From assembly GCF_000002075.1 (NCBI RefSeq), contig NW_004797788.1, forward strand, positions 432,894 to 496,893: DNA of 64,000 nt, in the 5' to 3' direction. Source of the DNA: Aplysia californica (lineage: Eukaryota). Made by a program: the position numbers and the translations under genes. The notes under the pieces were generated by a model. The model saw nothing but the letters and a program-made list of their open reading frames with translations. It did not search any database and was not told the origin of the DNA. Shown here in pieces: positions 8,917-48,678 of this stretch (position 1 is the stretch's first letter; the number at the start of each line of letters is the position of its first letter).

Positions 8917-11900
8917 GTCTCTCTCTCTTTTCTCTCTCTCTTTCTCACATGCTATTTCTTCAGTCTCACAGTCTGGCAAACACATGCATAATATATATAT
9001 CACAGTACATCATTACGACAGGTATGCTTTTGTGAATAAGAAATGCTTCAGCTGATTTTTGAAAATGGAAATTGTTGGGGCAGATCTTATTTTATATGGG
9101 AGTTCGTTCCATACCTGGGGACCAAAGAACAAAAAGGAACGCTCGCCATATGTTTTGTAATTTTGTTTTGGAGTTTTAGAGAATGAGATTGTCAGAGGCT
9201 GATCTAAGGGCTCTAGGTGGATGATATAATTCCAGGAATGTTTTAAGATAAAAGGGTGCACTATCATTTATACATTTAAAACAGAGAACGGCAGTTTTGT
9301 ACTTGATCCTTTCTTTTATTAGCAGCCAGTGTAGTTCTTTCAGAATATGTGTTTTATTGTATTCTCTTTCACTCACTGCAACCTTTATTTCCATGCCTGC
9401 TTAGACTTCATCAGCTTTTAGTGGAATCTTCCCTGGTTATAGACCAATACCGTACCAACAAGGTTTTTTGGTAATTACAGAAAGATTCCTATTTTCATAA
9501 GAGGAGGCAGTGTGAAGAATGAAATTTAAATTATAATTTTTTTTACCCCCTTTTTTTTAACGTTTGGTGATGTCATAGGAAGAAAGAGGTGTCTATTTGT
9601 TGCTAGTCGTAAGACTTCACTTAATGGGATGTTGCATAATGCCAGGGTCTCCTTGAATTTGTAGAGCTCTGTCTTTTTTGAGTTGTCCAATGGCCTTGCT
9701 GCTGTCAAATTTTGTATTATTGCCACACTTAGGCCTGATGGTATGCTTGTGAATGTGTGAAGTGCCCAAAATGACTTCAGACTTTGTTAATGATTATGAT
9801 AATGAATATCTTTGGTTCCAGCAATTTCCATAATGTTGGTGTTATAAATCTTGTCTTGTTTGGTCTTGTTAATGATTTGTCTTCATTCAGCATCTAATTT
9901 CTCATTTTTTCATTTTGCATTCTTGAGGCTGTGTCAGTGTCCAAGTGTGATGTTGAATTGTCAAAGTTGGTGCAAAGATAAGTTGATGATTTTTGTATTG
10001 TATTTTGTCTTCTGTGGGATAATGAGATGTTTTTGTAGGGGAAGGGTTGGTTTTCTACCTCAGCTTATTCCTTGTCTAGCATGCTAGAAAAATTGACATT
10101 TATTTTTTTGCAGAAGGGGAAATGAAACAAGTTTATTGTCAAATGATTGTAAAATGGAATGTTTTTAAAATGTTTGCATATTTATGAACAGCCCCCACCA
10201 AGTCGTCGGGCTGAGTCCAAAGACAGACCTGGCAGTGTCAGGAGCATGACCACACAGGACAAAACGAAACAGAAGCCATCAGCAAAGAAGAAGGTACTGC
10301 GTCACTGGGTGTCATGCTTAAGAAAAATAGAACTTGCTCAAACGGCCACCTGTCCGAAAGAAATCACCTGTCTAAGCGAACACTTCCCCCTTCATTAAAA
10401 AAAAATATTTTAAAATGCTATAATGACACTATTCATGATATCCACTTATACGAGACAACCACTTTTCTACTCTACAATAGGTGGCAGTTTCTGATAATTT
10501 TTACCGTTCTTATAACATGATATTATTGGTTGATGGACTTAAAGAAATCTTTTTGTAGTGAGCAAAATTGCACTGTCATGCAATAGTGCTTTTAAAGTAC
10601 ATTTCGTATTTTTTTCAAACATGGATAAATGCTAAGGTTCAAATCTCAGTGAGGTTAGAAATACTTTTCCTATCCTTCCTGAAATATTACCTCTCAACAA
10701 GATGTACTGAGTGGGGAATCAAGTTTTCCACCCGTGTAGTAAAAGAAAATGATCTTAGAGAAGCATTAGAAAACAGAAGTGGGTCATGTGTTTGGAAAGG
10801 TTAAGACACCCTAGCTACTTTAAAAAAAAGAACTGTCTGATCACTTGAGATATTTTTTTTACATGGGTAAACAGAACACTCGTACGTCTTTTGGTTTAAG
10901 TAGACTCCACTGTATTTTGTTGGTGCAGATTCCAAAACATTTCTTCGATGTGTTATCCCCCTGAAGTTTTCTAAATTGTTTGTGTACATTTATGTCTCTT
11001 CCAGCTTCAATGAAATTTCTTTTTTTTCTTAAAAGTGAAAACAGAGTGAGAGGAAAATGGTGAAGAGGGAAAATGTTACTTGTAATAACTGTTTTCTTTA
11101 TCTGGGTTTTCTTGAAAGAATGAACAGCTTGACAGCTTGGGATGCTTAGGTATTGTGCTGATTTTTATATTTTGCCTACCATATTATTATATAGGATGTG
11201 AAAGGAAGAGATGCAAAAGAAGAGACCAAAACGGTGAAGAAAGACAAAGAAGATACTCGAGGTGGTGGTAAAAGAGGTGAGTTTTAATTGGTTTTCTTTA
11301 ATATCTAGAGCTTCCAAGTATTGTGTTGAATGTCTGATCTTCTTTTTTCGTCTCTGATCAGATACCATTTTGATATATTCTGATATTTCATTAAAAACAT
11401 TGACGCGAGTCTGATTTCTGTGGTTTTTCAACTTTGTCAGAATTCTATGGGCAGTCATGCTCTTTTGTTGTTTTTTACGTGCTTTCATTGTTTGAAGTGG
11501 TTCTATTTTCTGTTTACACTTTGACGTTTGTTTGTTTTAGTAGAGTTTTTACGACGTTCACAACTGCATAAGGTCATATGAGCGCCAGTCTGACGTTTAC
11601 TTCTTAAAAATGTGTCAGGCTGAGAAATGTGAAAATCTTGAGATAGCCAATGACAGTTCTCTTTTGATGTTGACAGTTCTTGTGCATAACTCATTTCTTG
11701 CTTTGGTTTTTCTCTGAGATAGTCTGTATTGGAGAAATGTTGGTGCACTCAAAAAAAGTTCTTATATAGCCATGAACTATGTTAGTAACAAACGGCAATG
11801 GACATGTTTTCTCCTGTTGTGTTTGTTATGATAAAACAACATTAAAATGTGAGGATGTTGAGCCATGGAGAAGTGTTGATACTAAACTTCTAGTACTGAG

Positions 11901-14900: not shown

Positions 14901-17900
14901 TCTTCATTTTACTTTGGGTTTGTGAAATTAAAAAAGAAAAGCAACAGTGTTATGAACTTGTCAAAATTTAAAGGTTACCAATTTGTTCTTTGTAAATTGC
15001 TGGGACTTTCAAAAATCCTTCACAATTTTATCTCCCTCTGAGGCTTTCTTCTGAATGGCAAACTCTTGAACTTCCCGTACATTTTCTTTCTCACCTGATG
15101 TTTTAGAATACATTTTTATGGTGATGGTTCTGTTTTCTTTCTCCAACAACTTAATTCTTAAACAGAATATTATACTATATTATATGAATTTTCAGAAGAA
15201 ATTTCAAATAAGTTTGAGACTTCTGGTTGTTGTGCAGAGCAAAGTGGAAATAATATTAATTTTTTATTGGATTTCCAAAGACATTTTTATACATGCTGAT
15301 AGTCCAGATGAAGGTAATTGATAATTTAACTATAGGTGAACATTTTATATATCATTTGAGAAAGACCTTTCCTTGTTTTTCTAGCCTTATTATCTTCCTT
15401 TAATCTCTGAACAGTGTCTGCATAGCGTCTGCGTAATACTTCAGCTCTTTTAGGCTATTGGCTTCTTTTAAAAAAATCTCTGAATTTTCCTAAAATTGTC
15501 GTGCAGCCATTCATAATAACCTTTTCGTTAATTCTAAGTGTGCTTGAAAAAGCAGTCTTTTCCAATCAATTAAATCATAGCACAGCCATTGAAACCTCTT
15601 TGTTGTTCAATTGTTATGAAATTGCTGAAAAAGCCATGGCTTGGAATATTTAAACCTTGAGAAAGCTTCTGTTGATTCACACCAATTCTGCAGTTTGCCC
15701 TTTTATTATTTTCTTTATGGCGAGCAAATCCATATTTATCCAAGAATTCAATGAGTAAAGTAGCTTTATGTTATGTTCAATAGGTTTTTGAGTACCTATA
15801 ACGTTACAATTTCAGACATTTTGGCTGAAAATTTCACTTGGTTCACAAAGTACCAACATTTTATTCTGTTTTTCTAAATGGAAGGATTTTCTTTTCCCTG
15901 ACACCTATGTAACTTCCAGCTAGTTTTGGTTGGCTTCAGGACTTTTTGATGATTAGATTATCCCTCATTCTACAATTCTACAATATCTATTTACCTCTAT
16001 AAGGTATAATGTTGCTTCGTCTGTTCTACTCCTCATCTTGGTCTCTCAACTTTTATGTAATAATACAGTGTATTTGGTACCCTTTCATTTTAGTCATATT
16101 GTCTTTTTCACTCTCAGATTATCTAATATTTTTGTTCTCTTGTGTTTGGGATTCCTTCAGTACAACAGATCAATGGTTTACTTTATGCTGCCAATTTCTC
16201 TATGTGCATTTTTTTGGTAGGGGGTTATTTTTTTTCTCTTCTTAATATTGCTTCTATTTTACATGAAACTGGAACATCTAATAGTTATAGCCTATATTGG
16301 CTGTTTTGTTTTACGGAGGCCTTTGTTTTAATGGTTAATGTTATTCTTTTAGTGTTGCTTCTTTTTCACTGTCTTTTTCAGTCATGCTCCTTCATTGTAT
16401 CATTCCATGTTTCCAACATTTGATGTCCACACTCTTTCTTCTTTTATGTGGAAATCCAATTTTATTTGGCCCTACTTAATTTGTATGTTGTAAGTGATGG
16501 TTCTTGATTGGTCTTTTCCTTCTACTTCCTTTCTCATATTGCTTTTGTCATCAACTGAATCTAGGCCAATTGGTGGTGCTGTCTTGATGGGTTAGTGTAC
16601 TGCAACTCAACTCTACATGGGTCAAATGTGGCGCAACATTGCAATTGTAGTCATAGTGTGTGTGGTTGAAGGATGGAGGTTGCAGTTTCTTCTACTTTTT
16701 TCTTGTCCTTTTTTTACTTTAGTATGTTATTTCTCCTTGTCTTGTCTTTCTTTTACCCATAGTCACGCAGATGAGTATTTACTTTTCCCCTAAAGTATTT
16801 TAAGCTATTTGTACAATTATGAGCGATGATAGTATCTGTCCATGTTCCTATTTTAGATTTAATTGAAGTCAAGTTTTTGCCCAATATGATATGAGTCACA
16901 CATATGGCTTGAAGTTATAAGTTGTGGTCATACGAAGGATATCACATGAAGGGATTATTCTTGCTTGGTCCATTTGTTTTTTTTTTTCCTTTTCTTTTTT
17001 ATTGATTTGCCCTGTTGTCGAACTCTGCAGCACAGCAGACAAATCCCAATGCAGGTACTGGCAGAATGTCGAGTGGTGAGTGTGCCGTGAGACAGCACTG
17101 GTGTGGCATGGGCTGTAATGCACCACACGTCTAGTGTGCTCTTTCTGTATGGCCATGCATTGGATGATATGATTATTATCGTCGATTGATAATATGAAAT
17201 ATGATCCTATTTATTCGGTCTTCCACTTTTACGCAACACATACTCTGTGTGTGCCGCACCTGTTGTTTTTTTCTACGTAGCTGTACAGTGCAATGAGTGA
17301 TTTTAGCGTGATGCAGTTCTCAATTAGGGCCTTGCAGTGAAAGTCAACTTTTTGCATTATGAGCTTTATACTGGGCTTTGAGCGCATGGCTGTACATTTA
17401 TGTACACTCGTTAGTGCTGATGGTCTCTCTTGGGGAAGGATGGGCCTCTAAAACGAACTGTGCCAACCAACTTTGTTGCAGTGGCAGTCAATGTGGAGTC
17501 CAAAAGGCTCGGACGAGTATGTTGGTGGACGTGTAACTAAAATCATGATATAAGCAAAAACAGATCTCTATGTTGTTTGAGTTTTTTAACTGGGAAAGTT
17601 TTACTAAAGGAAAATACAATTATCATCATGTGCATCCAATAAAAAATTGTTTGTTCAAGCTGCATGAGCTTTGATACTAGCCTGGCACTTATTTGGCTGC
17701 AACGCTGAAAATAATAATGATGTTTATTACTGTAAGTGGAAGCTATAATATACAATATTGTAGGCAGAGGCAGTTTTAACCAAGTCTCCCATTGCATGAC
17801 TATAGAATGAGGATTCTTCAGGCAGAGAGGTAGCATGTGTGTGTGATCTTTACATATGTGCCAAACTTTTCTACTGGCAGAGGGTGTGTATCATGTACAC

Positions 17901-20900
17901 ATATTATCTACTGCCTGTCATATCTAGTTTCCTCTGCATGTTTGGCATATTATAATGTAATATCTGCTTTCTGGAAACTTTCGTAATGAATTACTGAAAA
18001 TATAGATGTTATTTTTAGATGTGCATGTAGCAAGTTTTTTTCCCTCTGTAAATGGCTTGTCATAAATGATGTCAGTGTCACAAGAAGTTCACGCTTTAGG
18101 AGATATATCAGCAATACTCTTAGTTGTTGACAAATACAACAAAGATATTGTGATAACTATTCATGGGCATTTTGTTGTCAAAACTGCATTTTTAAAAAGG
18201 ACATCTTCTTTTATAGTCTTCCCAAAGACAGCTGTGTGTCGATTCCAGGCCTCAATACTTGCTTCCTTTAGGCTATCATAGCTCAAAATGACTGTATGTG
18301 ATGGAAGAGTTTATCTAGTCTGATCCTGGAAGGAATTATTCACCATGGGAGCTGATACATTTTGAAATTAATCAATTCTTTTCATTTTCTTTATGAAAGG
18401 TGAATTCTGTTTTGTTTCAATTCTCCGCAGTAGTCCTTAGGGTTTTTACCACTGATCTTGATAATGTAAATACAAAAATACAAAGATTTGAGTAAGGCAA
18501 AACACAACTGAATTTATATTGCCTTGGGCATTGTCTGTCATGGGAAGGTGATTGTGTTGGAGCAAATTTAGCCTGTGTCTGTTTTGTTGATGTCTTTGAG
18601 ACCATGTCAGGTCAACTGGTTCACTGGAGTGTTGTTCGAAGACTTTCAATACAAAAAAAAGGATATCATTTTCTTAAGGAGTAAGATTTTTAAAATTACA
18701 CCCGGAACAAGACTTTTGTGATTCTTTCGTTCATTGCATCTTGCACTGTACTTTTGTCTCTAACCCATAAAGCACATTTTATATATATATATATATATCA
18801 GCATTCAGGTGCTGAACTATCAAGGCTCTTCTTTGTGCATACAGTGTGAGATACAATAGTTGAGCACCTTTTAGAAGACGTGCACCAGAAAATCTGTATT
18901 TAGTCTCTAAAGATGACTTTGTTTCTGTTGTCTTCTATGACTTCTGTTTCTTGCAACTTTTCTTGCCCATTTGCAGCATGATGTATTACCTTGTTTCCTT
19001 TGTCTGAATATCTAACACTTTATGATATTCCCTATCTGGCTACCAAGGTTCTGTGGCTTTCAAAGCTGCTATAAAACTCGTCACATCTGGTAAAAGGAAA
19101 ATACAACTGCTCATACTCAACCGCGTTGTGATTTGCATAATGTTTCTTCATGAGCCCCACATATTGTCATAAGCCTGAATAGTTCCTGTGTGTAGCATTG
19201 ACTTGCATGCCTACAGTACTGGTTTATGGGTAGTTATGTGATGACCCAGTTGTGCTTAAATTTTGTTTTTTTTACCTCTGTAAATGCAGGAAAGTTTATG
19301 ATAGCTTATAGCAAAATCTTGTGCGTTAGCAGTCCTTGTTGCATGGGTGTCATAGTATGTGTTCGTTCATACATTATGTACTATCAGTCTAGTAAATTTT
19401 AACTACCCCATGCTATCTACCTGATGTGTACATATTATGTTAAGTTGGAAATTCAAATTGTTATCTTTATTTGAGAGCCTTGAAACTGGTAGAGGCAATA
19501 GCATGGCTATGTGGCTTTGGCATGCCTTCTGTACAAATTATGAAGTGCATGTTGACGTCGGATTGATTTCTGGACTTACTAGATTTAGATGGGGTGTCGC
19601 AACCAAGTTATTCTCCATACTTTTTTTGTTCCCATCTGTACTGTGTGAATGTTATGGTGGTAGATTATAATTTTGTTTCCATTCTGTTTTCTGAAAACTT
19701 TTAGCTGACTTCCTTCATTACAAGGTTTATTCTAATTTTCTGTCTCATTCGGCCTTGGCACTGAGACGAGCAATGTTGCAGGCTTTTATGAGGCAAAACA
19801 CTCTCTTCTCATTGCTGAGTAATTCAGTTCCATGATCTAAAAAAAAACCAAGGTTCGGTACCTTTTCTAGGAGCATGCACTGAAAATTGTAATGCCTTTT
19901 AATTTCAAATTGTCCCCAGGACAAAAGCATCTTCCCATGGCGAAATCTCGTATATCTGAGAAGAAGCTTTCACTTTCCTCCTTTCAACATTTTTTTGCCA
20001 TTATGCATGATCTTCTTGTTCATCGCCCTGTTAACTATCAAAGATACACGGCTAGAAATTGCTTCAACATTGGCAAACATTTGGCAGTGTATGAGAGCAA
20101 AGGACAGCAGAGGATTGTAGTCTGTCATGAGGCCTTCTCATTCACTGTAATTTCTCCTTGTCCTTGGATGCCATGGCTGCGTTGGTCACAATTTCAGTCG
20201 TTTTTGAAAGGCAGTTTATCTCACTCCATTGGCCCTTTTTTTTACCATATCGCGGATTAGCATCGTGGCACCATGAATTGGTATGTTTCAAGGTTAATGG
20301 TGATGTTGAAAGTATAGAACTCGCATTGTCATTGTGTGATGAGGCCTTCATTGTCATGGTATTGAAAGAACCAAATCATAGATAGATGTAAGGCAGTGAT
20401 ATTTCAAAACTGCTAAGTTGCATGTGTGTTAAATTAGGACATTGATGATATATTATATAAATGTTATTTTCAAAGGCCACAGTGTCCATTTCTTGGCTAC
20501 TGACTAGACGTCTGCTTCTTATGTAATAGCATTCTCTTATGTTTATTTTATGTTGCCCGTTATTAAATGGTTCAGTTGATCCCAATATATACAGATCAAA
20601 ATGAACCCATCCCTGAGTTGTCAAAGGGTTCAAAACAATCTGATTGTCATTTTAGAAAACTTTCTTGTTCCAGTAAGGTGTGCTCTTCTTTCTGTAATAT
20701 ATATATATAAGTATAATCCATCGTAACAGTACCTATACCAGGGCGCAACTCATCTCCTGGTAGGGTTCAATCGTAACCGTTACAAGTCCAGCGTAGGTGT
20801 GACTTTTTTTTTCTTCTCAATACTTAGGCCTACACCCTTTCTTCTATGATGATCTATTTCTCATGCGGATCTGTCAGATTAAAGAAAAATACGTCCTTAA

Positions 20901-23900
20901 AACTCTTTTCTGTAGTATGGTCATTGCCAGACATTGATGGACAGACTTTTGTCAAATTTAATTAATAATTATTGTTATTATTATATCTTTAAAAAAATAA
21001 GAATGTCTTCAACAGTCCGCTCACAATATATTAGCTGTCACTGCTGAAGCTGATTATTGTTCTGTAGCGTTTTTTGAACAGAGGTTCTTTGAGAACAATC
21101 TTTGTCCCTGTCCTTTGAATACAAGTTATGACATGCTTCTCCCTTCAAACAAAGGCATCAAATATGAAATATAATAATATTAGTACTCTTATGTCACTGC
21201 CGAAAATTTTGGGAATGTTTTTTGGGGGATTTTTTTGGGGGTGGAGGGGGGAGGTGGGAGGTTGTATCTCCAGTAGCAAACTATTGCCATCTTTGAAATC
21301 TTTTACAGTGTTTTAAGTTTATAACCCCCTCCCTTTATTTTTTTATGAAGGAATCAGACGTATGATTTATTTTTGTGATATTGTGAGACATGAAGCACCC
21401 ATGAAGATATAAGGCTTAGGATAAAAGAGAGTCAATTGTTACAAAGTTCTGATAAGATAAGATGACCAATTGATGATCCCAACAGAAAATGTTATGGGGC
21501 AGGGTAAATACATATTATGCATGCGCACTCGTTAANNNNNNNNNNNNNNNNNNNNNNNNNNNNNNNNNNNNNNNNNNNNNNNNNNNNNNNNNNNNNNNNN
21601 NNNNNNNNNNNNNNNNNNNNNNNNNNNNNNNNNNNNNNNNNNNNNNNNNNNNNNNNNNNNNNNNNNNNNNNNNNNNNNNNNNNNNNNNNNNNNNNNNGAT
21701 AGTCATTGAATGGACTTAAATTCATCACATATATCCTAATTCTGTCAGCTTGCTTTCAGTACTTTGATACTTTTAAAAAAATTGCTGGTGCTGTTTCTGT
21801 TATTTCCATCGTCAGTTTGTTTCAGGATGTCGGTGTTTCCAAGCTGTAGTTGCCATCGCTTTTGTCATAATCATCATCATCGTCATCGTCATCGTCATCA
21901 TCATCGTCATCATCCTTATCACCACTACTGTTATCCTCATTGTCTTCACTGTTGTCATTGTGATTTGATGTGTCCAATGTCCTTTTAAAGTAAGTTGTGA
22001 ATGTATTTATGTATTTATTTAGTAAGCTGACTCTCTGAGTATGGGATGTTCTGCCCATTCCCTCCCCCCTCCCCCCTTTCTTTCTCTGATCTCAGTTTTT
22101 TGTACAGCCTTCTTTGAAACTTGCATCCTGGTGTAGGCTTCTCCTTTTTATTTCTCTCTTCTTTGAAATAAAAAAAACCAAAACTGAAGCCTTCTCTCTA
22201 CTGCAAATTTGTTTTTTTTTCAAGTGACGTTGCTTGTTTTGAAGTCTTCTGATTATTTTGCTATCCTAAATTAATATGTTTTGAAGTGGCGTTGAAACCA
22301 GGCTAATGCTCTAAGTAGTGTGTAGTGTTTTTAAAAAAAAATAATAACTCTGCATGCTGTGTAATTCTTTTTGTCTTTGAATTTTGAACTAATGTGTTTA
22401 TACATATATATATATACACCTCCCTCCGCCCACTCCCTTGCAAATAAATACTCTGCAGAAAAAAAAGCCAAATCAAGCATAGATATTAACACTTTGTCTT
22501 GTGTTTCTTGTCCAAAATTAAGTGTGAAAATTGTTTCAGTCTCTCTTGATGGCCCAAAAATTATTGCTGTATTTTTTTTCTGTCATTCTCAGATAATACT
22601 TCATTTTCCTCATCTGAGAGGTTAAGATGGTTGGGAAAGGGGCGTGGGTAAAAAAGGATGGGGGAATAGGGGGAGAGACACTACAGAGTGTTCGTCTCCT
22701 CGTTTTAGTTTTATGATTTCATTGCTATGATAGAAAAGATTGTAAAAGAAATACATATTTACAAGATGTGGAACAGAAAAAAACACATGTAGGTGTAAAG
22801 CAAAACAATTTCTTTTGAAATATATTAATGAGTTTAAAGAAAGTAGATAAATCCTTTTAAAAGATGTGCTGGTCTTTTGTATTCAGTGAGAAAATTGTAT
22901 TTTCCAATTCCCCCAAATTAGAAACATTTTTATACTTTTTTGTCTTTCTGCTATCTGTAAATCTGTAGGGGGATATAATTATCTTTGGAGTTACATGTAT
23001 TGGTAACATGTTCATAAATTTTGTTCTTCATATTTGTAAATGTTGCTTATAAAAATGGCCAATATTGTTTGTACTGTCTTGATGAATATTAAGACTGGTT
23101 TTGAAGCAATACTTTAAAAATTCTTGATTATTTGATAACATATTGATTAAATATATTCTCTTTGCATCTTTCAATGGCTGATTTTGATTTCATTCCATGT
23201 TGAAAGTGTTTTCTCAGTTAGAAAAACTCACAATGCTTTGTGTATAAGTTCAGGAGACCCAAATTATTGGAAGCTAAACCTACTGATAATGACTAGTTTT
23301 TGTATTATTATTATATACTATAATTGTCGTAGTATCCAGTAATTTTACTATCATTTGCTGTAGTTTGAGTGTTAACTCCAACAAAACCAAGGTATTTTGT
23401 GTTTTCTTCGTTTGTCGTTGTTTTGATTTCATTTTACCTTTGTTGCACCATTTGAAGAACTGAAATGTTACTCATATACTTTTTCTGGACTTCCGTTCTA
23501 TAGCCTCGGTGGCTGCAGAAGCAACCAAGACAATGGGCAAGACTAAAGACAAAAAGAAAGACAAAGGCAAATCGTCAAACCAAGAAGCTGAGGTAATGGG
23601 ATCTCTTTTCTGTCGCCCCTCCACATATTTTTTTCCATAGTTTACACTGAGTGTGCTGTGTGAGGGAACTACCATTTTCAACGTCGGAAGAGTTTATTGT
23701 TCATTCATGAGGAGCTTAGGAAAAACTGCCCAATAAAGGAAGTGTTCAGTATTCAATTTGATATGGTTCAGACACCTAATATTGAGCTTTGTTCTGCCTT
23801 GAAATTAGAAGCAAATGTACTTTATGGAGAAAGTATAGTTCATATTTTGTCCTCATTACTTGGTACTGTGTTTTCTCAAAGAAGAAAGTAATAGGCGATT

Positions 23901-25855
23901 CTTGTCACAGTGCATTGACAGCACTGTGTACTGTGTCATGTTAATTCTCGCAGGTCTCCGTTGGGAAAAATTGACAAGGAACAAAGTTACATTTCCTCAA
24001 TCAATACAAAGTTCAGAGAAAGATGCCTGTTTCATTTCAAATTCAGTATCATTATCACTTCCTTGCCATTTACATGAAAAGAATTTATAATAGGCTGCTC
24101 TGTGTATGTATGTCAATTGGGAAAGCACTACCCATTCTATTTATTTGATGTAATAAATTAAAAAGAAATATAATGTTGCGAGTCTGAATAGGAATTGTGA
24201 GTCAAATCTCTTTTTGATGCGTTAAAATGATGTGCTAGGAGGTAAAGGTGGTATCAAATATAACTTCCCCTTTCTCTGTTTGACTCTGTCTATAGTTTTT
24301 CTCGCACTGTGAAATTTAAACTTCTCTTTAACCTTGATTTTCTACCGTATTTTCTTGCACAAGTTATATATTTTTGGTTAATGAAATAATGAATTAGGAG
24401 ATTTGTGCCCTTCTTTTACCTTTTTTGGGGGGGTAAATCTTTGTAATATTATGTCTGGTACTTGCTCTCAAAGTTGAAGAGTAGTCAGAATATAATACCG
24501 GTATTCATGATTTTCAAAATTGATTGAGGTTGTGGGGATTTTGCATTCTACAGTTAATTTTCAGGCTACTCAAAATATCATCAGACGAATCAGGGAGGAT
24601 AAATTCATACACGATTTACAATTTTATATTTTCTCAACTTCTCCTCTGGAATTTCCCAGAGAGGCTGAAAGAGAATATGAGTTGGATCTTTCTGTGGAGA
24701 CACAGAGTTATCTGCACAACAGTTTATGAACGTTGGGTGTATGGAATCTTCTACTACAGAATGTTTTAACATAATATAATAAGCGGTGTTCAAAGGAGGA
24801 CAGAGCTATATTGTCTCAATGTCTTTTGAGTTTGCTAACCCCATTACAAAAAACAATTTTTATATCTGGCACCTACTTTCCTGTCTTCTTTGTTTCTTTT
24901 CTTTTGAATTTGAGTGGATGTAGTAGGCTAATTCTGGGACATATTTTCTTCTTAAAAACTACTTCCAGCTTGCGGAGTCTCCGGTGAGCACTAACTACAT
25001 TTTGTATTTTATGGAAGTGCTCGGCAGATTATTGAGCATTTTGCATTTCATTGTGAATTTTGGTAGTCATTTGTATTTATACTAAGTTTTGAATGAAGCA
25101 GCCTTCTTGTGCACAACTGTAGCATTCATGTTAAGATCTCAAGATCAGACTTTTTTTCTTTCTTATTTGACAAAGGTTTGCTATCTTCTACTTTGATAAA
25201 AACATGCATTTTTAAGGAATACTTGCTTTGCTCAGTTGGCATTCCCTTCTGTTTTGGTGTGTTGTGTGACTATTGCTTACTTTTCCGGTTGTGCCTTTAC
25301 AGTATAAGTGTTCAAGAAGTGATTCTGTCAAAAGAATGTCTAAAAAATAAGTTAAGAGTACTTCAACAGAGTTATTCCAAGTAATAGAAGTGTGAAAGAA
25401 ATATGACTTTTTAACTTTAGTTTGGCTTCCCGAAAAATAGCTATTGACTCTTTGTTAGTTGATGGGCAGAGGTTTTATATAAAATATAGTTTGGTACTTG
25501 TACTTATTTTTCCCATTTGTTTTGCAAAATTCATAGACTACATACATTACTTCTGGCAGACTTAGGTCAGCAATAGTAGTTAATTTGATCATTAGGCTTG
25601 CTTTATTTTATTGTTACTTTCTTTTACTTTATATGCTTTAAAGAAAGGGCTTTCAACCCAAGCATAATGTTGCATTTGAATTTTTTACTTCAATTTTTAA
25701 AAAATCATAAAGCAATTTTGTCATGTTGTACGTAGGCTTTTTTTTGTCTTTGCGCATGTTTAAATGAGTGTATGAGAGACAGACAGTGTATAGTGATCAA
25801 CAAACACTCTTGTCATTGTATCCATATAGTTATATTATGTATGTGTGTTTGTTTT

Positions 25856-25903
<48 letters not shown>

Positions 25904-28900
25904 TATGTGCGTGGGCATGTGTATGTGCATGTGTAAATACATGTGCAATGTGCATGTACATTTGTGTTTGTGTACTTGTTTATTTGAGGAAGAAAGACAA
26001 TGACTCAACAGAGCACCTGAATAGTGCACACATAAACAGGCGCACAAAAAAAGAGAAAAAGAAATAATCTCCAGGAAAAGAAAATGAAACTGGAAAAGAC
26101 AGTCATGACAACAAATGCTGACTAGTTTTTTGTTCTGTAAATCTTATCTCCCATGGTTTTGTTTAGTAATGAAATGTTACTTTTGTCATTATGGCTATCC
26201 AATTCTAAAAGGCCATAATAAAATTTCATCAAATTTATTGAAATACGTTTCACATCATTGAAGTAGCACATCTTTCATAATCATCAGCATGTTGGGAGCA
26301 AGCATTTGTATTATGGAAATCCTGAAAGGAGTGATAGGAACAATGGGGATGTATCCTGAGCTTTGTTATTTTTTGTTTGAAATTTACACCCCCACCACCA
26401 CCACCACATCCAGCTCAACACCCATTTCCTTCACCTCAATAAAAATTTGTGGGCTATATAATTGAAATATTGCTTTTCCTTTATCTCACTACATCTATCA
26501 AGGGACTGATGTTCTTGTAAGTGGGCAGTGCTATGCGTGAAATAAAAATGTAAAGGGAAGACATGAAATTCTCCTTTTTTATTCTGCCTTGCCCCCAACC
26601 TCCATACATAAACATCTCCCACCATATTTTAGTGAATTTTGCCACAGTACAGCCTGCATTTCCTGAGATTCACAAGGCCTCTTTGTTTTCTCAACGTTAT
26701 TATAGAAAAATAAGACGCATGAAACTACACAAACTGCCTTAACTTCCTTCAGCTGACACAGCGTTATTTGGCAGATTTTTATTTTTAGAATTGGTTCTTA
26801 GGTCTGTCCTTTTTGGGGAAAAAATTCTGTCTCATGATAAAAGTGGGCTGTTAAGCAGATTTGGTTACAACTTTGGGTGTTCTTAGGCGGAGACCACAGA
26901 ACTTAAAAAAAAATAAGCCTACCTTCTATTGACTTGAATCTCCAACTTATAATGAAGAACTGTTTGTTGTCAGGTCAGCTCTCCGGAACTTGAAATTGTG
27001 GTAATGAAGAAATCTGTTTCTTGATTCTGTCACAGTTTGGAGGATATTTCAAATTTTTGTGCTTATGAAAAATTTGATGAGCTGGGTTTTTTTTCAGCCT
27101 ATTTGTGCCTTTCTTGCATCTTTTGTTTTGTTTTTGTGGATTTTTTACTGGTCTTGCTAAAAGATTTGCCTTTTTCACAAATTGTTTTGAGTATATCAGG
27201 GCGATAGAGAGAAGACATACCATTATATCTCTTCCTTTATTGAGTTCATGAAATTTTAAGTCTGATCACTTTCAAAGCTTTTGTTGAAGAACAATTCAGA
27301 TAGTTCAACCTATTAATTTTCAAAAACACTTTCTTTGATAATCAATGGCATTGCATAGAAATATTTCCTTTTTACTAGGGATACAGAAAAACAGTTGTTT
27401 TTCTTTTGTGTCAAATTATAAGACTGCTGGAAAGTTTAATTATTTAATTGCCTATGTCACATTTTCAGTTGACGCTCACTGTCTTGAGTATTGATTGTGT
27501 TCTAGATATTTTTGCCGTAGTTCACAGTTCATTGTACTTGCATGGTCAGCTCATGTCTGACACATTTGCTGCTGCCATGGAGGACTCGATCTGTCCAGTT
27601 CTTTATAAGATCTGTGATGTCTGCTCTGCTTATTCCCATGGCCTCATGTTTATTTGTTTGTGCCATATAATAATAGTAAAATTAGTACTGTACAACCATT
27701 TATCGCACTCAAGCATAACATAGGAAATAATTTTGCATGCACACATATTGTTTTTCGTGTGCATTCATTGCTTCAGAGCATACCATGTCACTGGCATCAG
27801 TTCTATTGTGGTTATCAGTGTATTTATTCGCACTCTTGTGATGGCTATTGTTGTTATGATTATGAAGATTATTTTCTGTGTTGTTATTCTTTTTATTATT
27901 ATTATGGTCGTATTATTTATCTTTTTATTATTATCCTTATCTTTAGGAGTAGTGTTTTATGTAATTTTAGAATTTAATATATAATATTTACTTTGATAGC
28001 TCTTCTATTTTCAGTTACTGGAAAGCTTTTGTCTATTTGTTCATTGGTTGATTTTGTATTTTTAATGAAATTCATAAACTGCTGAAAATATAAAGCTTAA
28101 CTGAAAGCTGAATATGAAGGAAGAAAATGTACTCATAATATAGGATTAATTATGTGAAACTCTCCCCCCTATTTTTTTGCAATGATTGAAGAAGAGAATA
28201 GCAATTTAAATGTGAAGCACTAAGCTCAGAATAAATAGCTCTATTATATAAAAACCTAAAACCATAGGCCTAAAGAGAAGTTCACAATTTATGGAACAAA
28301 CACTCAACTGGAGAATCCAAAAAGCAAAGTAGGATTAGGAATTTAGAAAACTTCCAGAACTAACCAATTATTATAAAGATTCCCCTGTTGTTTTGTCCCA
28401 AGTACTGCTATCGGTTAAATGCTGAACTGACTGTAGGTGGCTGATTGCTGTTCTGGTGGGGTTTATTCCTTCTGTGTCGTTTTCAAAGCTACGATTGCCA
28501 TAATCTATGCTGAGGATATGGATGATCCTGCCTGCAAACTAAACATAACTACAGTTCTAGCCTGGAAAGATGACAAAAGAAGAGAAACCTAGAGCCAATT
28601 TTGGGGCATTATTTTGTGATGAAATTGCAGGAATAATTTTTAGAGAATTCTTAATTTTTTTCACTTCAGATAAGCATTGCTGCAACCCCCCCCCCACCCC
28701 CCACCCCACCCCACACACACACACTCTCCCACACTTGCCGAGGATAGTCTGTTTGACCTTCACAGATACAAAGCAAGGCATCTGTGGGCATGCCAATTGA
28801 ACAGCTATGATCGTAAATAACTTCTCACTGAAATTTTTTTTTTCTTTCATAGTTCACTGTACATATGGAATCACGAGTAAAAAAAGATCTCAAGATTATG

Positions 28901-31900
28901 CTAACTGGCATTAGTAGGCTAACATTCAACACAAGGACTTTGATAATGAATAAGAAATAACTGTTCTACAGGGATACACTTCCTTTCTTCCTCTTTAGTC
29001 ATACTGTTTGTTCATGCACTCTTATAATATGTGAGCTGTGGAAGAGCTATTCCGTAACATTTGTGACTAAAGAAAAAATTACAAGTAGTAAATTATCCCG
29101 ATCAGTGCGAACTATCCTGTTATTTTAGAAGTTTATATTGTCTGTTTATATTCTTATTTGCCTCAGAATATGGATTCCCAAGACCTCATCAACCCGCTGT
29201 TAGAAGTCGCTGATTACATGGACGGGCAATTGTGGATTGCAGGAAATCGAACTCTCATCAATCTAAATCTTGCACGTAAGGCTAAATTCAGATATCGTGT
29301 ACATGTAGAACAAAGAATGTTTTAGCATAAATGTTTTTCCTCTTGTAATTAAAAAAGTCAAGGTACTTTAGTGCTTGTGAAATTCATCGCAGGAAATAAA
29401 GAATTTGTCTTTCGGAAAGAATATATATATGTAGTTTCTTTCTAAGTAAATACCGGGGAAAGAATTAGATGCAAAATTACTATTTTGAATTGAGGATACA
29501 GTGCCACACTTGTAGCTGATATTTTAAATACTTTTTTCTTGGAACATTTGAGTCATAATTGCTCATATAGGAAATCATTTTGGCATGCAACCCATAAGTA
29601 TACATAAGTGACCACTTGGTCATTCCCACAATGTAGTCAATGCTTCAATTCGCATTAGCTCACACATCTAAATTATCCATTTTTTTTTCTCCCATCCTGT
29701 TCATTTTGAGCATGTCACTCAAAACAGCTGTTGCATTTCATTACATTAGGCAGCGAGTTACAGAAAAGTGTGAATAGTGTCCTGTTGAAGTCCTTTACCC
29801 TTCTACACAGATAGCAGTAAGCATAGAAATTGTTATGAGCCCACCTTAGAATGATTCACACTATGGATTTTCACTGATGGATCATTGAATTATGGAACTG
29901 ACTGGCCTCATGACTTGGTATCCCCTCCCCCCCCCCATCCCTTCTCCTATCCTCCTTAACTCCCTCCCTCAAGGCAACAAGTAAAAGCATAAGAGCATTG
30001 TCACCCTATTACTATTATATTAGCTCATCTTAAGTGTTAAGTGTAAGACTCTGCCAAACGCCATTTTGAAACATGATGTATAACAGGTTCTTACACTGAA
30101 TACTGAGCTGTCGATTTATCAGTGCAGAATGTGTGGGAATTTGATAATATGGTCTACTATCACATTTCATGAGGAAACCTTTTTTTTCCTAATTTGTAAC
30201 CAATAGTTTAGCGAATGATTGTCTTTTCTTGCTTTTTCTGTATATTTGGCCCTGTTGCAAGCCGTCCAACTTTCACCAGTATATTTAGTGTTGATGTAAC
30301 CTAAGCGGTGCTTTCTGTTGAAATTTACATGAAAATAAATGGAAGAAAATCCATAACCGATTGAATTGAATTGAAGCATACTAATATAGAATAGGAAGCA
30401 AGATTCATTCAGGTAAAAGTGTGCTAGGACCAGGAAATAAAAGAATATCTCATTGCCCTGAAATAGCACCACCATACTGTCAAAAGTCAAAAGAGATATT
30501 TTCGATAAAAGTAATCTCAGCATTGTCAGCAGATTGAGATGTGTCACAAGATAGGTCTCCCCCCCCCCCCACCAGGACCAGGGCAGTGCTACTGACTGAA
30601 GTTGTCTTTAGGCCATTCCCAAAGGGGGGATATTAACATGTTCTTAGACACAGTAGAATTGTAAATGGACTGATTTATCAATGTCATGCTCGTACTGTGC
30701 CGGTACAACATAGGGGGACCTGCTGCTTTTTCTTTCCTCATCCTTACTATAGTCATTTTTCCTCTACTTCTTTTGTATGTTTGTCACTCTCTCGTGAACT
30801 GCTATTTCCGGGGTGCCTTGATAGTCAAAGCAGACTTTGTGCTGTTGAGGCTAGAGAGGTGAGCAGAGTAAGCTTGATTCCCCGTTTGGACTTCTCTGTT
30901 GACATCCATCCCTTGGTGCTTATATGACCTTATGCAGTTGCGAGCACCGTAAAACCTTACTACACTACAACTAAAACAAGATAGGTTTGAGTAAATTCTA
31001 ATAGTAGCAGCACCAATTATGTATGATGCTGAATTTCAGCACATGAGGTAAATTATGCAAATTTTCTTGCTGTAATGGACATATTTGTTATCTTCTGAAA
31101 AGATGCAAGTTTGAGAAGTAGATTTTATATTACCAGTGATTTTTTTTCAGGTAACAACATTAGTGAGACTGGAATGTCCTCTCTGCTGAAGGCCATCCAG
31201 TACCAGACCACTCTGACCTCCGGCAACCGCAGCGGGGGCACTGGACTCATGAGGCTGGTCATCAACGTGAGTTCTTCTCCTCTTCCTCGTCCTCTTCCTC
31301 CTCCTTTTTTATCTTCATCTTCTTTTTCTTCTTCTCTTCCTCCTCCTCCTCCTCCTCCTCCTCCTTTTTCTTCTTCTTTCTCTCCCTCTGACAAGTCTCA
31401 ATGGCTGATATAATGAATATGACCATAAAGTTTATTTAGTAAAATGTCCATCCCAATGCAGCTATAGACGCTTTATTCTCTCACTTCCAAAACAAGATTG
31501 ATCACTTCACAATACACACAGCACAAACATACAAACCACCTACAGATAGATTGAGACGTAGAGAGTTAGCCCACAGTGCCTAATTTTTAAAAGTAGAATG
31601 TAGTATCCTTTCCTTTCAGGAAACCATGTGTTATTTTTAGGTCTCACAAATCATGTATGTATTGTGATCTATACTTTTTCAGTTTTTGTAAGGGACTAGT
31701 TGATAATTGTTTCTTTGCATTTGGTCTTAACCCTATCTGTAGGCTCTAGGGTCATTATGTACCCCCGGGGTTGTATTCTTCACATTTTAGAATACTTGTA
31801 GTACAAAGATCTCTTTGAAACTTTCAGTTTTTCTCGAAAAATCATTTTGACAGACTGCTATGAAAAGCGTACGAATCGGATTAACAATTAAATTTCCTCT

Positions 31901-43433: not shown

Positions 43434-43533
43434 NNNNNNNNNNNNNNNNNNNNNNNNNNNNNNNNNNNNNNNNNNNNNNNNNNNNNNNNNNNNNNNNNNN
43501 NNNNNNNNNNNNNNNNNNNNNNNNNNNNNNNNN
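43434..43533. other. Assembly gap (100 N)
   Basis: Run of N. Confidence 1.
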
Positions 43534-44475: not shown

Positions 44476-45122
44476 AAGAAAAACAAAAAACACACAAAAA
44501 AAACCCACGCACCGGCCCTTGCAACCTTTATAAAAAAAAAATATATATCCCGGCGGCCCGAACAAAAGTTTTTCATCGGCGCGAGAGGAGGTGTAACGTG
44601 AGGTGGAGTTTGGTTTGCTGTCTCACCTGGGCTTCTTCACCAAAAGTTACAACTGCTGACTAAAATTAGAACAAGACATTTTTACAAAGGCAACAAAACA
44701 AACAAAACAGTCCGAAAAAGGGCAAACAGCGAAAACCAAGCTGAAACAAGACCTAACTCGAAAGACAATCTTATTATGGTCTTACTATATCTCTGTATAC
44801 TGTATACTATTATAATAGGCCTACGACTCTGGGAGAACAAATTTGATTGGTGTGTCGATCATGATATAGATCTAGATCTAGGCCTCGATGCCAAGTTTAC
44901 TACTCAGATTGAATAATGTTATAATCAAAGACTCTCTGGCATTCGTCAAAGCTTTGACAGACTCATCACGATTCGCACAAGGCGAAGAGTAAGAAATTGC
45001 ATGTACAAGGTGAAAAACAAACTCATGTGTATTCAGTTGTTTGGCGATGTCAAGTGCTGCATTTCTAAACTAAGCCTGGGAAGTCACAGTTGTCACAAGG
45101 AAATTTAATTCATTTTCTTACA

Positions 45123-47827: not shown

Positions 47828-48678
47828 NNNNNNNNNNNNNNNNNNNNNNNNNNNNNNNNNNNNNNNNNNNNNNNNNNNNNNNNNNNNNNNNNNNNNNNNN
47901 NNNNNNNNNNNNNNNNNNNNNNNNNNNNNNNNNNNNNNNNNNNNNNNNNNNNNNNNNNNNNNNNNNNNNNNNNNNNNNNNNNNNNNNNNNNNNNNNNNNN
48001 NNNNNNNNNNNNNNNNNNNNNNNNNNNNNNNNNNNNNNNNNNNNNNNNNNNNNNNNNNNNNNNNNNNNNNNNNNNNNNNNNNNNNNNNNNNNNNNNNNNN
48101 NNNNNNNNNNNNNNNNNNNNNNNNNNNNNNNNNNNNNNNNNNNNNNNNNNNNNNNNNNNNNNNNNNNNNNNNNNNNNNNNNNNNNNNNNNNNNNNNNNNN
48201 NNNNNNNNNNNNNNNNNNNNNNNNNNNNNNNNNNNNNNNNNNNNNNNNNNNNNNNNNNNNNNNNNNNNNNNNNNNNNNNNNNNNNNNNNNNNNNNNNNNN
48301 NNNNNNNNNNNNNNNNNNNNNNNNNNNNNNNNNNNNNNNNNNNNNNNNNNNNNNNNNNNNNNNNNNNNNNNNNNNNNNNNNNNNNNNNNNNNNNNNNNNN
48401 NNNNNNNNNNNNNNNNNNNNNNNNNNNNNNNNNNNNNNNNNNNNNNNNNNNNNNNNNNNNNNNNNNNNNNNNNNNNNNNNNNNNNNNNNNNNNNNNNNNN
48501 NNNNNNNNNNNNNNNNNNNNNNNNNNNNNNNNNNNNNNNNNNNNNNNNNNNNNNNNNNNNNNNNNNNNNNNNNNNNNNNNNNNNNNNNNNNNNNNNNNNN
48601 NNNNNNNNNNNNNNNNNNNNNNNNNNNNNNNNNNNNNNNNNNNNNNNNNNNNNNNNNNNNNNNNNNNNNNNNNNNNNN
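47828..48678. other. Assembly gap
   Basis: Run of N. Confidence 1.

What the first reader, a model, noticed from the sequence alone, without database searches (positions are those of the whole stretch)
11277..24995. Hidden array of frame-preserving microexons in the LRRC71 disordered linker
Seen in sequence: the phase-1 intron between exons 11 and 12 contains five short AG-bounded/GT-bounded segments preceded by pyrimidine tracts. All are multiples of 3 and stop-free in the phase-1 frame: 12728-12742 (15 nt, VHVTV), 13427-13435 (9 nt, ALW), 14751-14771 (21 nt, ETRGTRG), 16763-16774 (12 nt, VTQM) and 17031-17075 (45 nt, or 24 nt via an internal donor). The next, phase-0 intron has a phase-0 15-nt segment, 24969-24983 (LAESP). 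All would insert into the low-complexity Lys-rich linker between the two LRR blocks. Established: tissue-regulated microexons are typically frame-preserving, sit in disordered or surface regions, and are missed by annotation. Inference: a combinatorial microexon module could generate many linker variants of a ciliary protein; I do not know of this being described for LRRC71. Caveat: I found these by eye, and some such segments occur by chance in 12 kb.
Basis: partly seen in the sequence, partly recalled or inferred. Interest (0 to 1): 0.75.

Follow-up and report, generated by a model that had tools for sequence, protein, structure and literature searches.

The report
Annotated alternative microexons in sea-hare LRRC71
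Four of the six tiny candidate exons are real alternative exons of the sea-hare LRRC71 gene that are already in the public gene annotation and have counterparts in other molluscs, while two have no support.

Summary
All six segments exist as written.

Sources name the gene LRRC71 of Aplysia californica. Its ten RefSeq isoforms X1-X10 differ only in linker cassettes. These map to reader candidates 13427-13435 (ALW), 14751-14771 (ETRGTRG), 17031-17054/17075 (both donors) and 24969-24983 (LAESP). Two cassettes were missed: 19048-19089 and 26974-27000. Candidates 12728-12742 (VHVTV) and 16763-16774 (VTQM) are in 0 of 10 isoforms and 0 of 128 homologues.

RNA contigs show joints 11276>17031 and 11276>13427, and 17075 joined to the next constitutive exon. 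No joint was seen at 12728, 14751 or 16763.

Similar cassettes occur in other gastropods, bivalves and an annelid. The cassette region is predicted disordered. Sense-strand UGCAUG is enriched in this intron, 13 against 4.7 +/- 2.2.

Verdict: the module is real but not hidden, so already known from annotation. No searchable paper pairs LRRC71 with microexons. An earlier scan note on this same stretch (s1-707135) flagged the UGCAUG cluster.

The parts
11195..11276 (+).
   Evidence: Present in all 10 RefSeq isoforms and mapped. An RNA contig piece covers 11193-11274.
12728..12742 (+). Reader candidate 1 (15 nt, VHVTV): unsupported pseudo-exon, not excluded
   Evidence: Found in 0 of 10 isoforms and 0 of 128 homologues. 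No joint in 4 runs. Single copy in the genome. 95% pyrimidine tract, weak donor GTTTGT, and a UGCAUG 24 nt downstream.
13427..13435 (+). Real 9-nt alternative microexon (ALW), phase 1-1
   Evidence: In RefSeq X1, X2, X3, X5 and X8. Joint 11276>13427 in one contig of run X4, depth 8.6. Not seen in any other species.
14751..14771 (+). Real 21-nt alternative microexon (ETRGTRG), phase 1-1
   Evidence: In RefSeq X7 and X10. Similar cassettes at the same site: DTRGTRG in Biomphalaria, EPRGTRG in Patella, and an identical ETRGTRG in transcript-derived P0294 of an unnamed relative. No joint in the 4 runs laid.
16763..16774 (+). Reader candidate 4 (12 nt, VTQM): unsupported pseudo-exon, not excluded
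   Evidence: Found in 0 of 10 isoforms and 0 of 128 homologues. No joint. Single copy. Donor GTATTT follows an A.
17031..17075 (+). Real alternative exon with two donors: 24 nt (AQQTNPNA, ends 17054) or 45 nt (plus GTGRMSS)
   Evidence: 24-nt form in X5 and X6, 45-nt form in X1-X4. Joint 11276>17031 in X4 (depth 748) and X6 (depth 23.9). 17075 is joined to the start of 23504 in X22 (4 reads), X4 and X6. Both forms occur in relatives (P0293 and P0296).
19048..19089 (+).
   Evidence: In X1 and X2. Similar cassettes in Biomphalaria, Physella, Elysia, Plakobranchus and oysters. UGCAUG 115 nt downstream.
12766..21523 (+). Sense-strand UGCAUG cluster (13 copies) in the microexon intron
   Evidence: 13 observed against 4.7 +/- 2.2 in shuffles (0 of 200 reach 13). 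5 on the other strand. No enrichment in the four other intron sets tested.
21536..21697 (.). Assembly gap inside the intron
   Evidence: Bridged in mRNA by the 17075>23504 junction. Not filled or looked up.
23504..23592 (+).
   Evidence: Its first 30 letters are the loose end behind 17075.
24969..24983 (+). Real 15-nt cassette (LAESP), phase 0-0, skipped only in X10
   Evidence: In 9 of 10 isoforms. 4-5-residue cassettes at the same site in relatives (PADS in P0164, HTES in P0169). Not covered by the reads laid.
26974..27000 (+).
   Evidence: In 8 of 10 isoforms, absent from X2 and X10. AG/GT bounded.
29167..29277 (+). Next constitutive exon (NMDSQDLINPLLEVADYMDGQ...), where the C-terminal LRR block starts
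   Evidence: Ends approximate, read from peptide anchors.

Best explanation
The window holds the LRRC71 gene of Aplysia californica. Two large introns carry six real alternative cassette exons: the intron between constitutive exons 11195-11276 and 23504-23592, and the interval (constitutive-exon intron) from 23592 to 29167.

The cassettes are 9 nt (ALW), 21 nt (ETRGTRG), 24 or 45 nt (AQQTNPNA, with or without GTGRMSS), 42 nt (GSVAFKAAIKLVTS), 15 nt (LAESP) and 27 nt (VSSPELEIV). All are multiples of three. All are symmetric in phase: 1-1 in the first intron and 0-0 in the second. Any combination therefore keeps the reading frame.

Their inclusion changes the length and composition of a predicted-disordered, Lys/Ser/Thr/Gly-rich linker between the N-terminal and C-terminal LRR blocks by 3 to 32 residues in the first intron (ALW + 45-nt form + GSVAF cassette in X1), plus 5 and 9 residues in the second. 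In mammals this protein is a sperm-flagellum and ciliary central-apparatus protein.

Shown: the exon coordinates, the isoform set, three RNA junctions, the similar cassettes at the same site in other species, and the predicted disorder. Inferred: that inclusion is regulated through the sense-strand UGCAUG cluster (Rbfox-type intronic enhancers), and that linker variants tune how the two LRR blocks are spaced or bound in cilia and flagella.
For: Identity of the gene: sources name the matching proteins LRRC71 isoforms X1-X10 of Aplysia californica. Residues 13-593 of X1 map exactly and collinearly on the window.

Isoforms: in the alignment of all 10, every difference lies in the cassettes and nothing else varies.

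RNA: joint 11276>17031 in contigs of runs X4 (depth 748) and X6 (depth 23.9, a 2102-nt contig). Joint 11276>13427 in X4 (depth 8.6). The loose end behind 17075 equals the first 30 letters of exon 23504 in X22 (4 raw reads), X4 and X6, checked.

Conservation:
- ETRGTRG-like cassettes in Biomphalaria, Patella, Haliotis, Bradybaena and Mytilus.
- AQQ..GRMSS-like cassettes in Lymnaea, Bradybaena and bivalves (..GGRSSG), and in the annelid Owenia.
- GSVAF..KLVTS-like cassettes in Biomphalaria, Physella, Elysia, Plakobranchus and oysters.
- An unnamed relative, 85% identical, has transcript-derived proteins with no cassette, AQQSNQNA, AQQSNQNAGTGRMSS or ETRGTRG at this site.

Disorder: the AlphaFold2 model of X1 has pLDDT below 50 at residues 380-487, which hold all cassettes. 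It is above 85 in most of the LRR blocks.

Motif: UGCAUG occurs 13 times against 4.7 +/- 2.2 expected in 11277-21535, with 5 on the other strand and no enrichment in the four other intron sets tested.
Against: - The RefSeq models were built on this same assembly, so their exact fit to the window is by construction. I could not see the transcript evidence behind them.
- ETRGTRG, the 42-nt exon, LAESP and VSSPELEIV got no junction evidence from my single read-laying run. ETRGTRG lay inside the stretch but showed no joint. The other three lay outside it.
- The two raw-read runs covered exon 11 only about 1-fold, so they have no power for rare forms. Contigs drop rare variants.
- ALW, LAESP and VSSPELEIV have no clear counterpart outside Aplysia or its near relatives, so they may be young or low-level splicing noise.
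- The cassette homology rests on short, low-complexity peptides (6 to 15 residues) at the same alignment position, not on orthologous introns.
- No data on tissue or function were available.
- UGCAUG enrichment is a motif count, not a demonstration of binding.
Confidence: 0.9

Rival explanations
1. All six segments are chance pseudo-exons. A long T-rich intron throws up many AG..GT, 3n, stop-free segments and none is spliced in.
For: The number of such segments equals the shuffle expectation: 86 against 86.4 +/- 12.3, with 94 and 78 in the other phases. Donors of several cassettes are weak, for example GTTATT at 14772.
Against: Four of the six are the exact variable blocks of RefSeq X1-X10. 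Two have RNA joints. Three cassette types recur in other molluscs. The chance that blind picks hit 4 or more of the 5 annotated segments with 6 picks from 86 is 3.5e-5.
Confidence: 0.02
2. The cassettes are spliced in, but part of the array (ALW, LAESP, VSSPELEIV) is young, lineage-specific, low-level splicing noise in a tolerant disordered linker, without regulated function.
For: ALW occurs in 5 of 128 proteins, all from Aplysia. The ALW joint has depth 8.6 against 748 for the joint that skips it in the same run. LAESP and VSSPELEIV align to gaps in most other species. Disordered linkers tolerate insertions (and general knowledge).
Against: 4-5-residue cassettes sit at the LAESP position in relatives (PADS, HTES and SCEA in P0164, P0169 and P0165). 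LAESP is in 9 of 10 models, so it is closer to a mostly constitutive exon than to noise. ETRGTRG, AQQ..GRMSS and GSVAF..KLVTS are conserved far beyond Aplysia.
Confidence: 0.25
3. Candidates 12728-12742 and/or 16763-16774 are further real microexons, used only in a tissue or cell type that neither the annotation nor the four runs sampled.
For: 12728-12742 has the best pyrimidine tract of all candidates (95%) and a UGCAUG 24 nt downstream of its donor. Both are single-copy sequence, not repeats. Real cassettes here also have weak donors. Contigs drop rare variants and the raw runs had about 1-fold depth.
Against: Found in 0 of 10 RefSeq isoforms and 0 of 128 homologues, and in none of the transcript-derived proteins of relatives. 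No joint, although run X4 detected a junction at about 1% of the main one. Their hydrophobic peptides (VHVTV, VTQM) are unlike the linker. About 80 equivalent chance segments share the intron.
Confidence: 0.12

Closest known systems
RefSeq models of Aplysia californica LRRC71, isoforms X1-X10 (accessions listed)
   Same: These are the same exons. The variable blocks ALW, ETRGTRG, AQQTNPNA(GTGRMSS), GSVAFKAAIKLVTS, LAESP and VSSPELEIV map to 13427-13435, 14751-14771, 17031-17054/17075, 19048-19089, 24969-24983 and 26974-27000.
   Different: The models hold nothing at 12728-12742 or 16763-16774. They are automatic predictions. I found no paper that discusses them.
Multi-isoform LRRC71 models of other molluscs (isoform labels up to X37 in Magallana/Crassostrea gigas, X25 in C. 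angulata, X24 in Saccostrea echinata, X22 in C. virginica and Mercenaria, X20 in Ostrea edulis, X13 in Biomphalaria)
   Same: The variable cassettes lie at the same linker position, just upstream of the conserved AS(V/L)(A/V)A(D/E) exon. Related peptides recur..GGRSSG..MRLVTSFA and E.RGT.G.
   Different: Cassette number and sequence differ by lineage. Oysters have extra cassettes (DSKSG, KEGGTGSR, VEEESRKTQHRGSIS). ALW was seen only in Aplysia.
Bilaterian tissue-regulated microexon programmes (3-27 nt, or up to 51 nt, frame-preserving, often in disordered or surface regions; SRRM3/4- and Rbfox-dependent). Recalled from the literature. Definitions also appear in the abstracts listed (PMC7821500, PMC8378409, PMC13174390).
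   Same: Size, multiple of three, AG/GT bounds, alternative inclusion, position in a predicted-disordered linker, and UGCAUG-rich flanking intron.
   Different: Neural or other tissue regulation was not tested. No splicing factor was tested. LRRC71 is a cilia and sperm-flagellum protein (PMC13279179 and PMC12979858, passages read), not a typical neuronal microexon host.
Arrays of small symmetric cassette exons used in combination, such as the 5' mini-exons of troponin T or the micro-exon genes (MEGs) of Schistosoma (recalled; MEG papers appear only in the listing)
   Same: Several consecutive small exons with symmetric phase, whose independent inclusion or skipping gives many in-frame variants of an unstructured segment.
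   Different: Here only a linker of an otherwise conserved LRR protein varies. MEGs are made almost wholly of microexons and encode secreted proteins. There is no evidence here for mutual exclusivity rules or for a role in diversity as such.

Membership tests
LRRC71 orthologue | Full-length collinear identity or similarity to proteins that sources name LRRC71 | tested here: met
   Residues 13-593 of X1 map exactly on the window. Mollusc orthologues are 57-85% identical in alignment A2.
LRRC71 orthologue | RNI-type leucine-rich repeats (Pfam LRR_6) in two blocks, plus the family's own Pfam domain PF27087 | tested here: met
   LRR_6 scores 61.5 bits against a cut-off of 23.4. PF13516 and PF27087 are the precomputed domains listed for all hits. 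PF27087 is absent from the Pfam copy scanned. LRR_1 is below cut-off (19.4 against 20.6).
Alternative microexon (up to 27 nt strict, up to 51 nt broad) | Length up to 27 or 51 nt, multiple of three, canonical AG..GT | tested here: met
   9, 21, 24/45, 42, 15 and 27 nt, all 3n and all AG/GT. By the strict definition, the 42-nt exon and the 45-nt form are small exons and not microexons.
Alternative microexon (up to 27 nt strict, up to 51 nt broad) | Both inclusion and skipping seen in transcripts | tested here: met
   For 13427 and 17031-17075: joints 11276>13427 and 11276>17031 occur in the same run. For the others the evidence is only the RefSeq isoforms and transcript-derived proteins of relatives.
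Alternative microexon (up to 27 nt strict, up to 51 nt broad) | Tissue-regulated inclusion (for example neural) | not testable with these tools
   Tissues of the runs are not given, and read laying allowed one call.
Alternative microexon (up to 27 nt strict, up to 51 nt broad) | Lies in a disordered or surface region | tested here: met
   pLDDT below 50 over residues 380-487 of X1, which hold all cassettes. This is a prediction, not a measurement.
Rbfox-regulated exon | (U)GCAUG enriched in flanking introns on the sense strand, typically within about 300 nt | tested here: inconclusive
   The intron-wide enrichment is met: 13 against 4.7 +/- 2.2, with 5 on the other strand. A site lies within 300 nt downstream only for ALW (278), the 42-nt exon (115) and the unsupported candidate 1 (24). 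For ETRGTRG and the 17031 exon the nearest sites are more than 500 nt away.
Rbfox-regulated exon | Inclusion depends on an Rbfox protein | not testable with these tools
   Needs knock-down or a minigene.

The most novel reading that the evidence does not exclude
The LRRC71 linker carries an ancient combinatorial array of small alternative exons. At least three cassette types (E.RGTRG, ..G(R/T)GR(M/S)SS and ..(K/R)LVTS) would predate the split of gastropods and bivalves. One would reach annelids. The array would be regulated through sense-strand UGCAUG sites to tune a ciliary central-apparatus and sperm-flagellum protein. None of this is described in any paper I could search. In Aplysia the array might also hold a further unannotated microexon at 12728-12742.
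Probability: 0.35. Interest if true: 0.5.

Novelty: already known. Interest (0 to 1): 0.3.

Why it matters
For the scan, this is a check on method. A reader working by eye picked four true alternative microexons out of about 86 look-alike segments.

For biology, the gain is modest. LRRC71 is needed for sperm motility in mice (PMC13279179, passages read). GFP-tagged LRRC71 localises to the ciliary central lumen (PMC12979858, passages read). Mollusc annotations carry isoform labels from X3 up to X37 for it. In each of the 13 species I compared, at least one isoform difference falls at this linker position, and some species also differ elsewhere.

A conserved, combinatorially spliced disordered linker in a cilia protein is a tractable case for asking what linker microexons do. 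It is an instance of a well-known kind of splicing, not a new mechanism.

Tried and rejected
**Things that led nowhere**
- Search with the LRR exon. The top of the list was swamped by unrelated multi-repeat LRR proteins. Only the single-stretch hits of 55-82% identity were useful.
- Greedy peptide mapping gave nonsense. An exhaustive spliced-alignment script timed out. 5-mer anchors worked.
- Whole-intron search in the window's own genome. It returned only one roughly 63-nt interspersed repeat at 11526-11588 and said nothing about the candidates. Short searches showed candidates 1 and 4 are single copy, which does not discriminate.
- Donor and acceptor strength. Real cassettes such as 14751-14771 have donors as weak as the unsupported candidates, so I rejected splice-site strength as a discriminator.
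- tblastn of 11 foreign linkers against 8400-29200 (after a script error). It gave no further credible hidden exon. Every hit outside known exons had E of 0.079 or more.
- Search with P0111, meant to reach beyond molluscs. P0111 turned out to be a gastropod too. Only three non-mollusc hits appeared (an annelid, a cnidarian and a rotifer), so whether the array is alternative outside molluscs stays open.
- Linker-restricted search with X1. It found 8 proteins, none of them new.
- Rfam and tRNA scans of the 11526-11588 repeat found nothing.
- Supplementary files were not opened. Microexon catalogues in the supplements of comparative splicing papers could list LRRC71 and were not visible to me, so "not in print" rests only on full-text searches.
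- The 19 papers that hold both LRRC71 and "splicing" were judged from the listing and abstract starts only.

**Left out**
Only single stop-free window stretches and database proteins were used as queries.

Full report
**1. What is in the sequence**

I read 11000-25600 and recomputed each candidate. All six are as described: AG before, GT after, a length that is a multiple of three, no stop in the stated phase, and the stated peptide. The flanking exons are 11195-11276 and 23504-23592. The first ends after the first base of a codon. The second starts with the last two bases of a codon and ends in phase 0.

The assembly gap 21536-21697 lies in the intron between the last cassette of that intron (19048-19089) and exon 23504-23592. 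No candidate's frame depends on it, because each frame is set by splice junctions and not by genomic distance. RNA later showed 17075 joined directly to 23504.

**2. Is it more than chance?**

- The intron holds 86 such segments.
- 200 dinucleotide-preserving shuffles give 86.4 +/- 12.3.
- The two wrong phases give 94 and 78.

Thresholds of 0.6 and 0.7 behave the same way. At 0.8 there is an excess (17 against 7.6 +/- 3.9), but it is equal in all three phases, so it reflects long T tracts and not coding. The reverse strand has far fewer (17-21 at 0.65) because the sense strand is T-rich. The criteria carry no signal and the case has to rest on other evidence.

**3. What the gene is**

A stop-free LRR stretch (6957-7169) searched against 1.84 billion representatives returned mostly unrelated multi-repeat LRR proteins. 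It also returned a few single-stretch hits of 55-82% identity. One of these, P0082 (551 aa), had DTRGTRG between sequences that match the two flanking exons. That was the first sign that candidate 3 is real.

Searching with P0082 gave 297 proteins, of which the best 120 are listed. Sources name nearly all of these LRRC71, and the named ones are all from molluscs. They include two clusters from Aplysia californica on a 571,942-base contig. The clusters hold ten RefSeq isoforms, X1 to X10. The window's genome has 927 Mb in 4332 contigs, and the window lies at 432,894-496,893 of its contig, which is consistent.

**4. The isoforms differ only by the cassettes**

In the alignment of all ten isoforms, every varying column falls in residues 407-438 and 469-482 of X1.

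| Linker content | Isoforms |
|---|---|
| none | X9 |
| ALW | X8 |
| ETRGTRG | X7, X10 |
| AQQTNPNA | X6 |
| ALW + AQQTNPNA | X5 |
| AQQTNPNAGTGRMSS | X4 |
| ALW + AQQTNPNAGTGRMSS | X3 |
| ALW + AQQTNPNAGTGRMSS + GSVAFKAAIKLVTS | X1, X2 |

Further downstream, LAESP is absent only from X10, and VSSPELEIV is absent from X2 and X10.

Mapping X1 on the window by 5-residue anchors places residues 13-593 collinearly. The constitutive exons begin at about 2860, 3584, 4798, 5184, 5627, 6543, 6999, 7779, 8356, 10192, 11195, 23504, 29167, 31153 and 34570. The cassettes fall at:
- 13427-13435
- 14751-14771
- 17031-17054/17075
- 19048-19089
- 24969-24983
- 26974-27000

All are AG/GT bounded. Residues 1-12 were not found in the window.

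Two annotated cassettes were missed. VHVTV (12728-12742) and VTQM (16763-16774) occur in none of the ten isoforms and in none of 128 LRRC71 homologues. Six blind picks from the 86 look-alike segments would hit 4 or more of the 5 annotated ones with P = 3.5e-5.

**5. RNA evidence**

The look-up of sequencing runs listed:
- three poly-A RNA raw-read runs of the same species label;
- contig runs holding 10-18% of the words of an exon-rich 10-kb stretch;
- runs holding 29-80% of the words, probably DNA.

I laid two raw-read runs (X21, X22) and two contig runs (X4, X6) on 11150-17149.

Results for the reading:
- Joint 11276>17031, GT..AG, in X4 (depth 748) and X6 (depth 23.9, within a 2102-nt contig).
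- Joint 11276>13427, GT..AG, in X4 (depth 8.6). That is about 1% of the main joint.
- The loose end behind 17075 in X22 (4 reads), X4 and X6 equals the first 30 letters of 23504-23592 (29 in X4).
- The loose end before 11193 equals the end of exon 10192-10293.

Results against the reading, or without power:
- No joint at 12728/12742, 14751/14771 or 16763/16774 in any of the four runs.
- The raw-read runs covered exon 11 only about 1-fold.
- Contigs drop rare variants.
- 19048-19089, 24969-24983 and 26974-27000 lay outside the stretch.
- Twelve loose ends were not shown.

The dominant form in these runs is the X4-type linker: exon 11, then the 45-nt exon, then exon 12.

**6. Conservation**

Gastropods:
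- Biomphalaria has DTRGTRG in one isoform and GSVVLKAALKVITS in four.
- Patella has EPRGTRG followed by TATVSGKSSG.
- Haliotis has EARGAR or DPRGAR.
- Lymnaea has ANQNAASGRMSS.
- Bradybaena has ESRASRG followed by AQANQNASAGYNSS.
- Physella, Elysia and Plakobranchus have GS..LK.A..L(I/M)A(S/H).

Oysters: thirteen C. gigas isoform representatives differ at the same site by DSKSG, KEGGTGSR, a 17-residue block, DKGGNTTGRSSG and AATMRLVTSFA.

Wider comparison: across 13 species with two or more representatives, the indel blocks fall in this linker, apart from some N-terminal differences and an alternative form of the exon-10 region in Biomphalaria and Physella.

Transcript-derived proteins of unnamed relatives, 75-85% identical to Aplysia: within one 90% cluster there are members with no cassette, AQQSNQNA, AQQSNQNAGTGRMSS and ETRGTRG. 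This reproduces three of the Aplysia options, including the two-donor exon, from independent assemblies.

The annelid Owenia model has AHAQASSSGRNSG at this place.

ALW was found only in Aplysia. LAESP has 4-5-residue counterparts in near relatives only (PADS, HTES, SCEA).

Caveat: these are short low-complexity peptides aligned by position.

**7. Context and likely mechanism**

Pfam finds LRR_6 repeats. An AlphaFold2 model of X1, built on a 33-sequence alignment, has mean pLDDT 69.5. Most 10-residue blocks have mean pLDDT above 85 over about 141-330 and 491-580 (block 541-550 falls to 66). It is below 50 over 380-487, which holds every cassette.

All cassettes in the first intron are phase 1-1 and those in the second are phase 0-0. 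Any subset therefore stays in frame. That is shown directly by the sequence.

The earlier scan note s1-707135 flagged UGCAUG motifs here. I tested it. On the sense strand of 11277-21535 there are 13 against 4.7 +/- 2.2 in shuffles (0 of 200 shuffles reach 13), with 5 on the other strand. None of the four other intron sets of the gene tested is enriched. Sites lie 278 nt downstream of ALW, 115 nt downstream of the 42-nt exon and 24 nt downstream of the unsupported candidate 1. For ETRGTRG and the 17031 exon the nearest sites are more than 500 nt away.

That inclusion is regulated by an Rbfox-type factor is an inference from known motif biology, not a result.

On function, a 2026 paper reports that Lrrc71 knockout mice have poor sperm motility. 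It mentions neither isoforms nor splicing (PMC13279179; passages found by term search, with 0 occurrences of 'isoform', 'splic' and 'microexon'). A 2025 paper places GFP-LRRC71 in the ciliary central lumen with HYDIN (PMC12979858, passages). That linker variants tune spacing or partner binding of the two LRR blocks is my inference.

**8. Comparison with what is known, and novelty**

The exons themselves are already in public annotation, so the finding as stated is already known and is not "missed by annotation".

Literature searches gave:
- 63 papers that mention LRRC71;
- 0 that hold LRRC71 and microexon;
- 19 that hold LRRC71 and splicing, all vertebrate, clinical or unrelated judging by title and abstract start;
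- 20 that hold microexon and mollusc, none about this gene judging by title.

Supplements were not visible.

The part I could not find described is the conservation of the cassette array across molluscs. It is a tidy example of a familiar kind of splicing, not a new kind.

**9. Verdict**

- Observation: confirmed.
- Interpretation: partly supported. Four of six candidates are real, two are unsupported and two real cassettes were missed. The array is not hidden.
- Confidence in the main reading: 0.9.
- Interest: 0.3.

Noticed in passing
window 11526-11588: A roughly 63-nt interspersed repeat in the intron. It has at least 40 scored copies at 89-97% identity elsewhere in the genome, from 1415 first-look candidates. 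Depth in the RNA/contig runs is very high (bin 11550-11749: up to 210,840 in X4), with many different loose ends on both sides. No tRNA or Rfam match.
   Followed up: partly
window 12766-21523: Sense-strand UGCAUG cluster: 13 copies against 4.7 +/- 2.2 expected, with 5 on the other strand. It is confined to the microexon-bearing intron.
   Followed up: yes
window 8446-11194 (by analogy; seen in P0082, P0151, P0152, P0158, P0165, P0167, P0170): In Biomphalaria, Physella, Elysia marginata and unnamed relatives, some isoforms replace or skip the PPPSRRAESKDRPGS exon (10192-10293 here) with short acidic or serine-rich sequence. This is a second variable site upstream of the cassette array. All ten Aplysia models keep the exon, and tblastn found no counterpart in the window.
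   Followed up: partly
window 1-2859: Residues 1-12 (MDRQDTLWNKSN) of the RefSeq proteins were not found in any forward frame of the window. The first coding exon probably lies upstream of the window or is split.
   Followed up: partly
window 21840-21960: A run of ATC/GTC triplet-like repeats (catcatcgtcatc...) just after the assembly gap, inside the intron.
   Followed up: no
window 17020-17030: The acceptor of the most-used cassette (17031) is preceded by CTCTGCAG. That puts a UGC directly at the 3' splice site, as described for SRRM4-dependent microexons (recalled). The other cassettes lack it.
   Followed up: no
window 45100-47700 and 50500-50850: Long stop-free stretches next to the assembly gaps at 43434-43533 and 47828-48678 look like remains of mobile elements. 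Examples are 45742-46125 (128 aa) and 50539-50844, which ends ...FTIRHILTECLDFGEIRRKYY.
   Followed up: no
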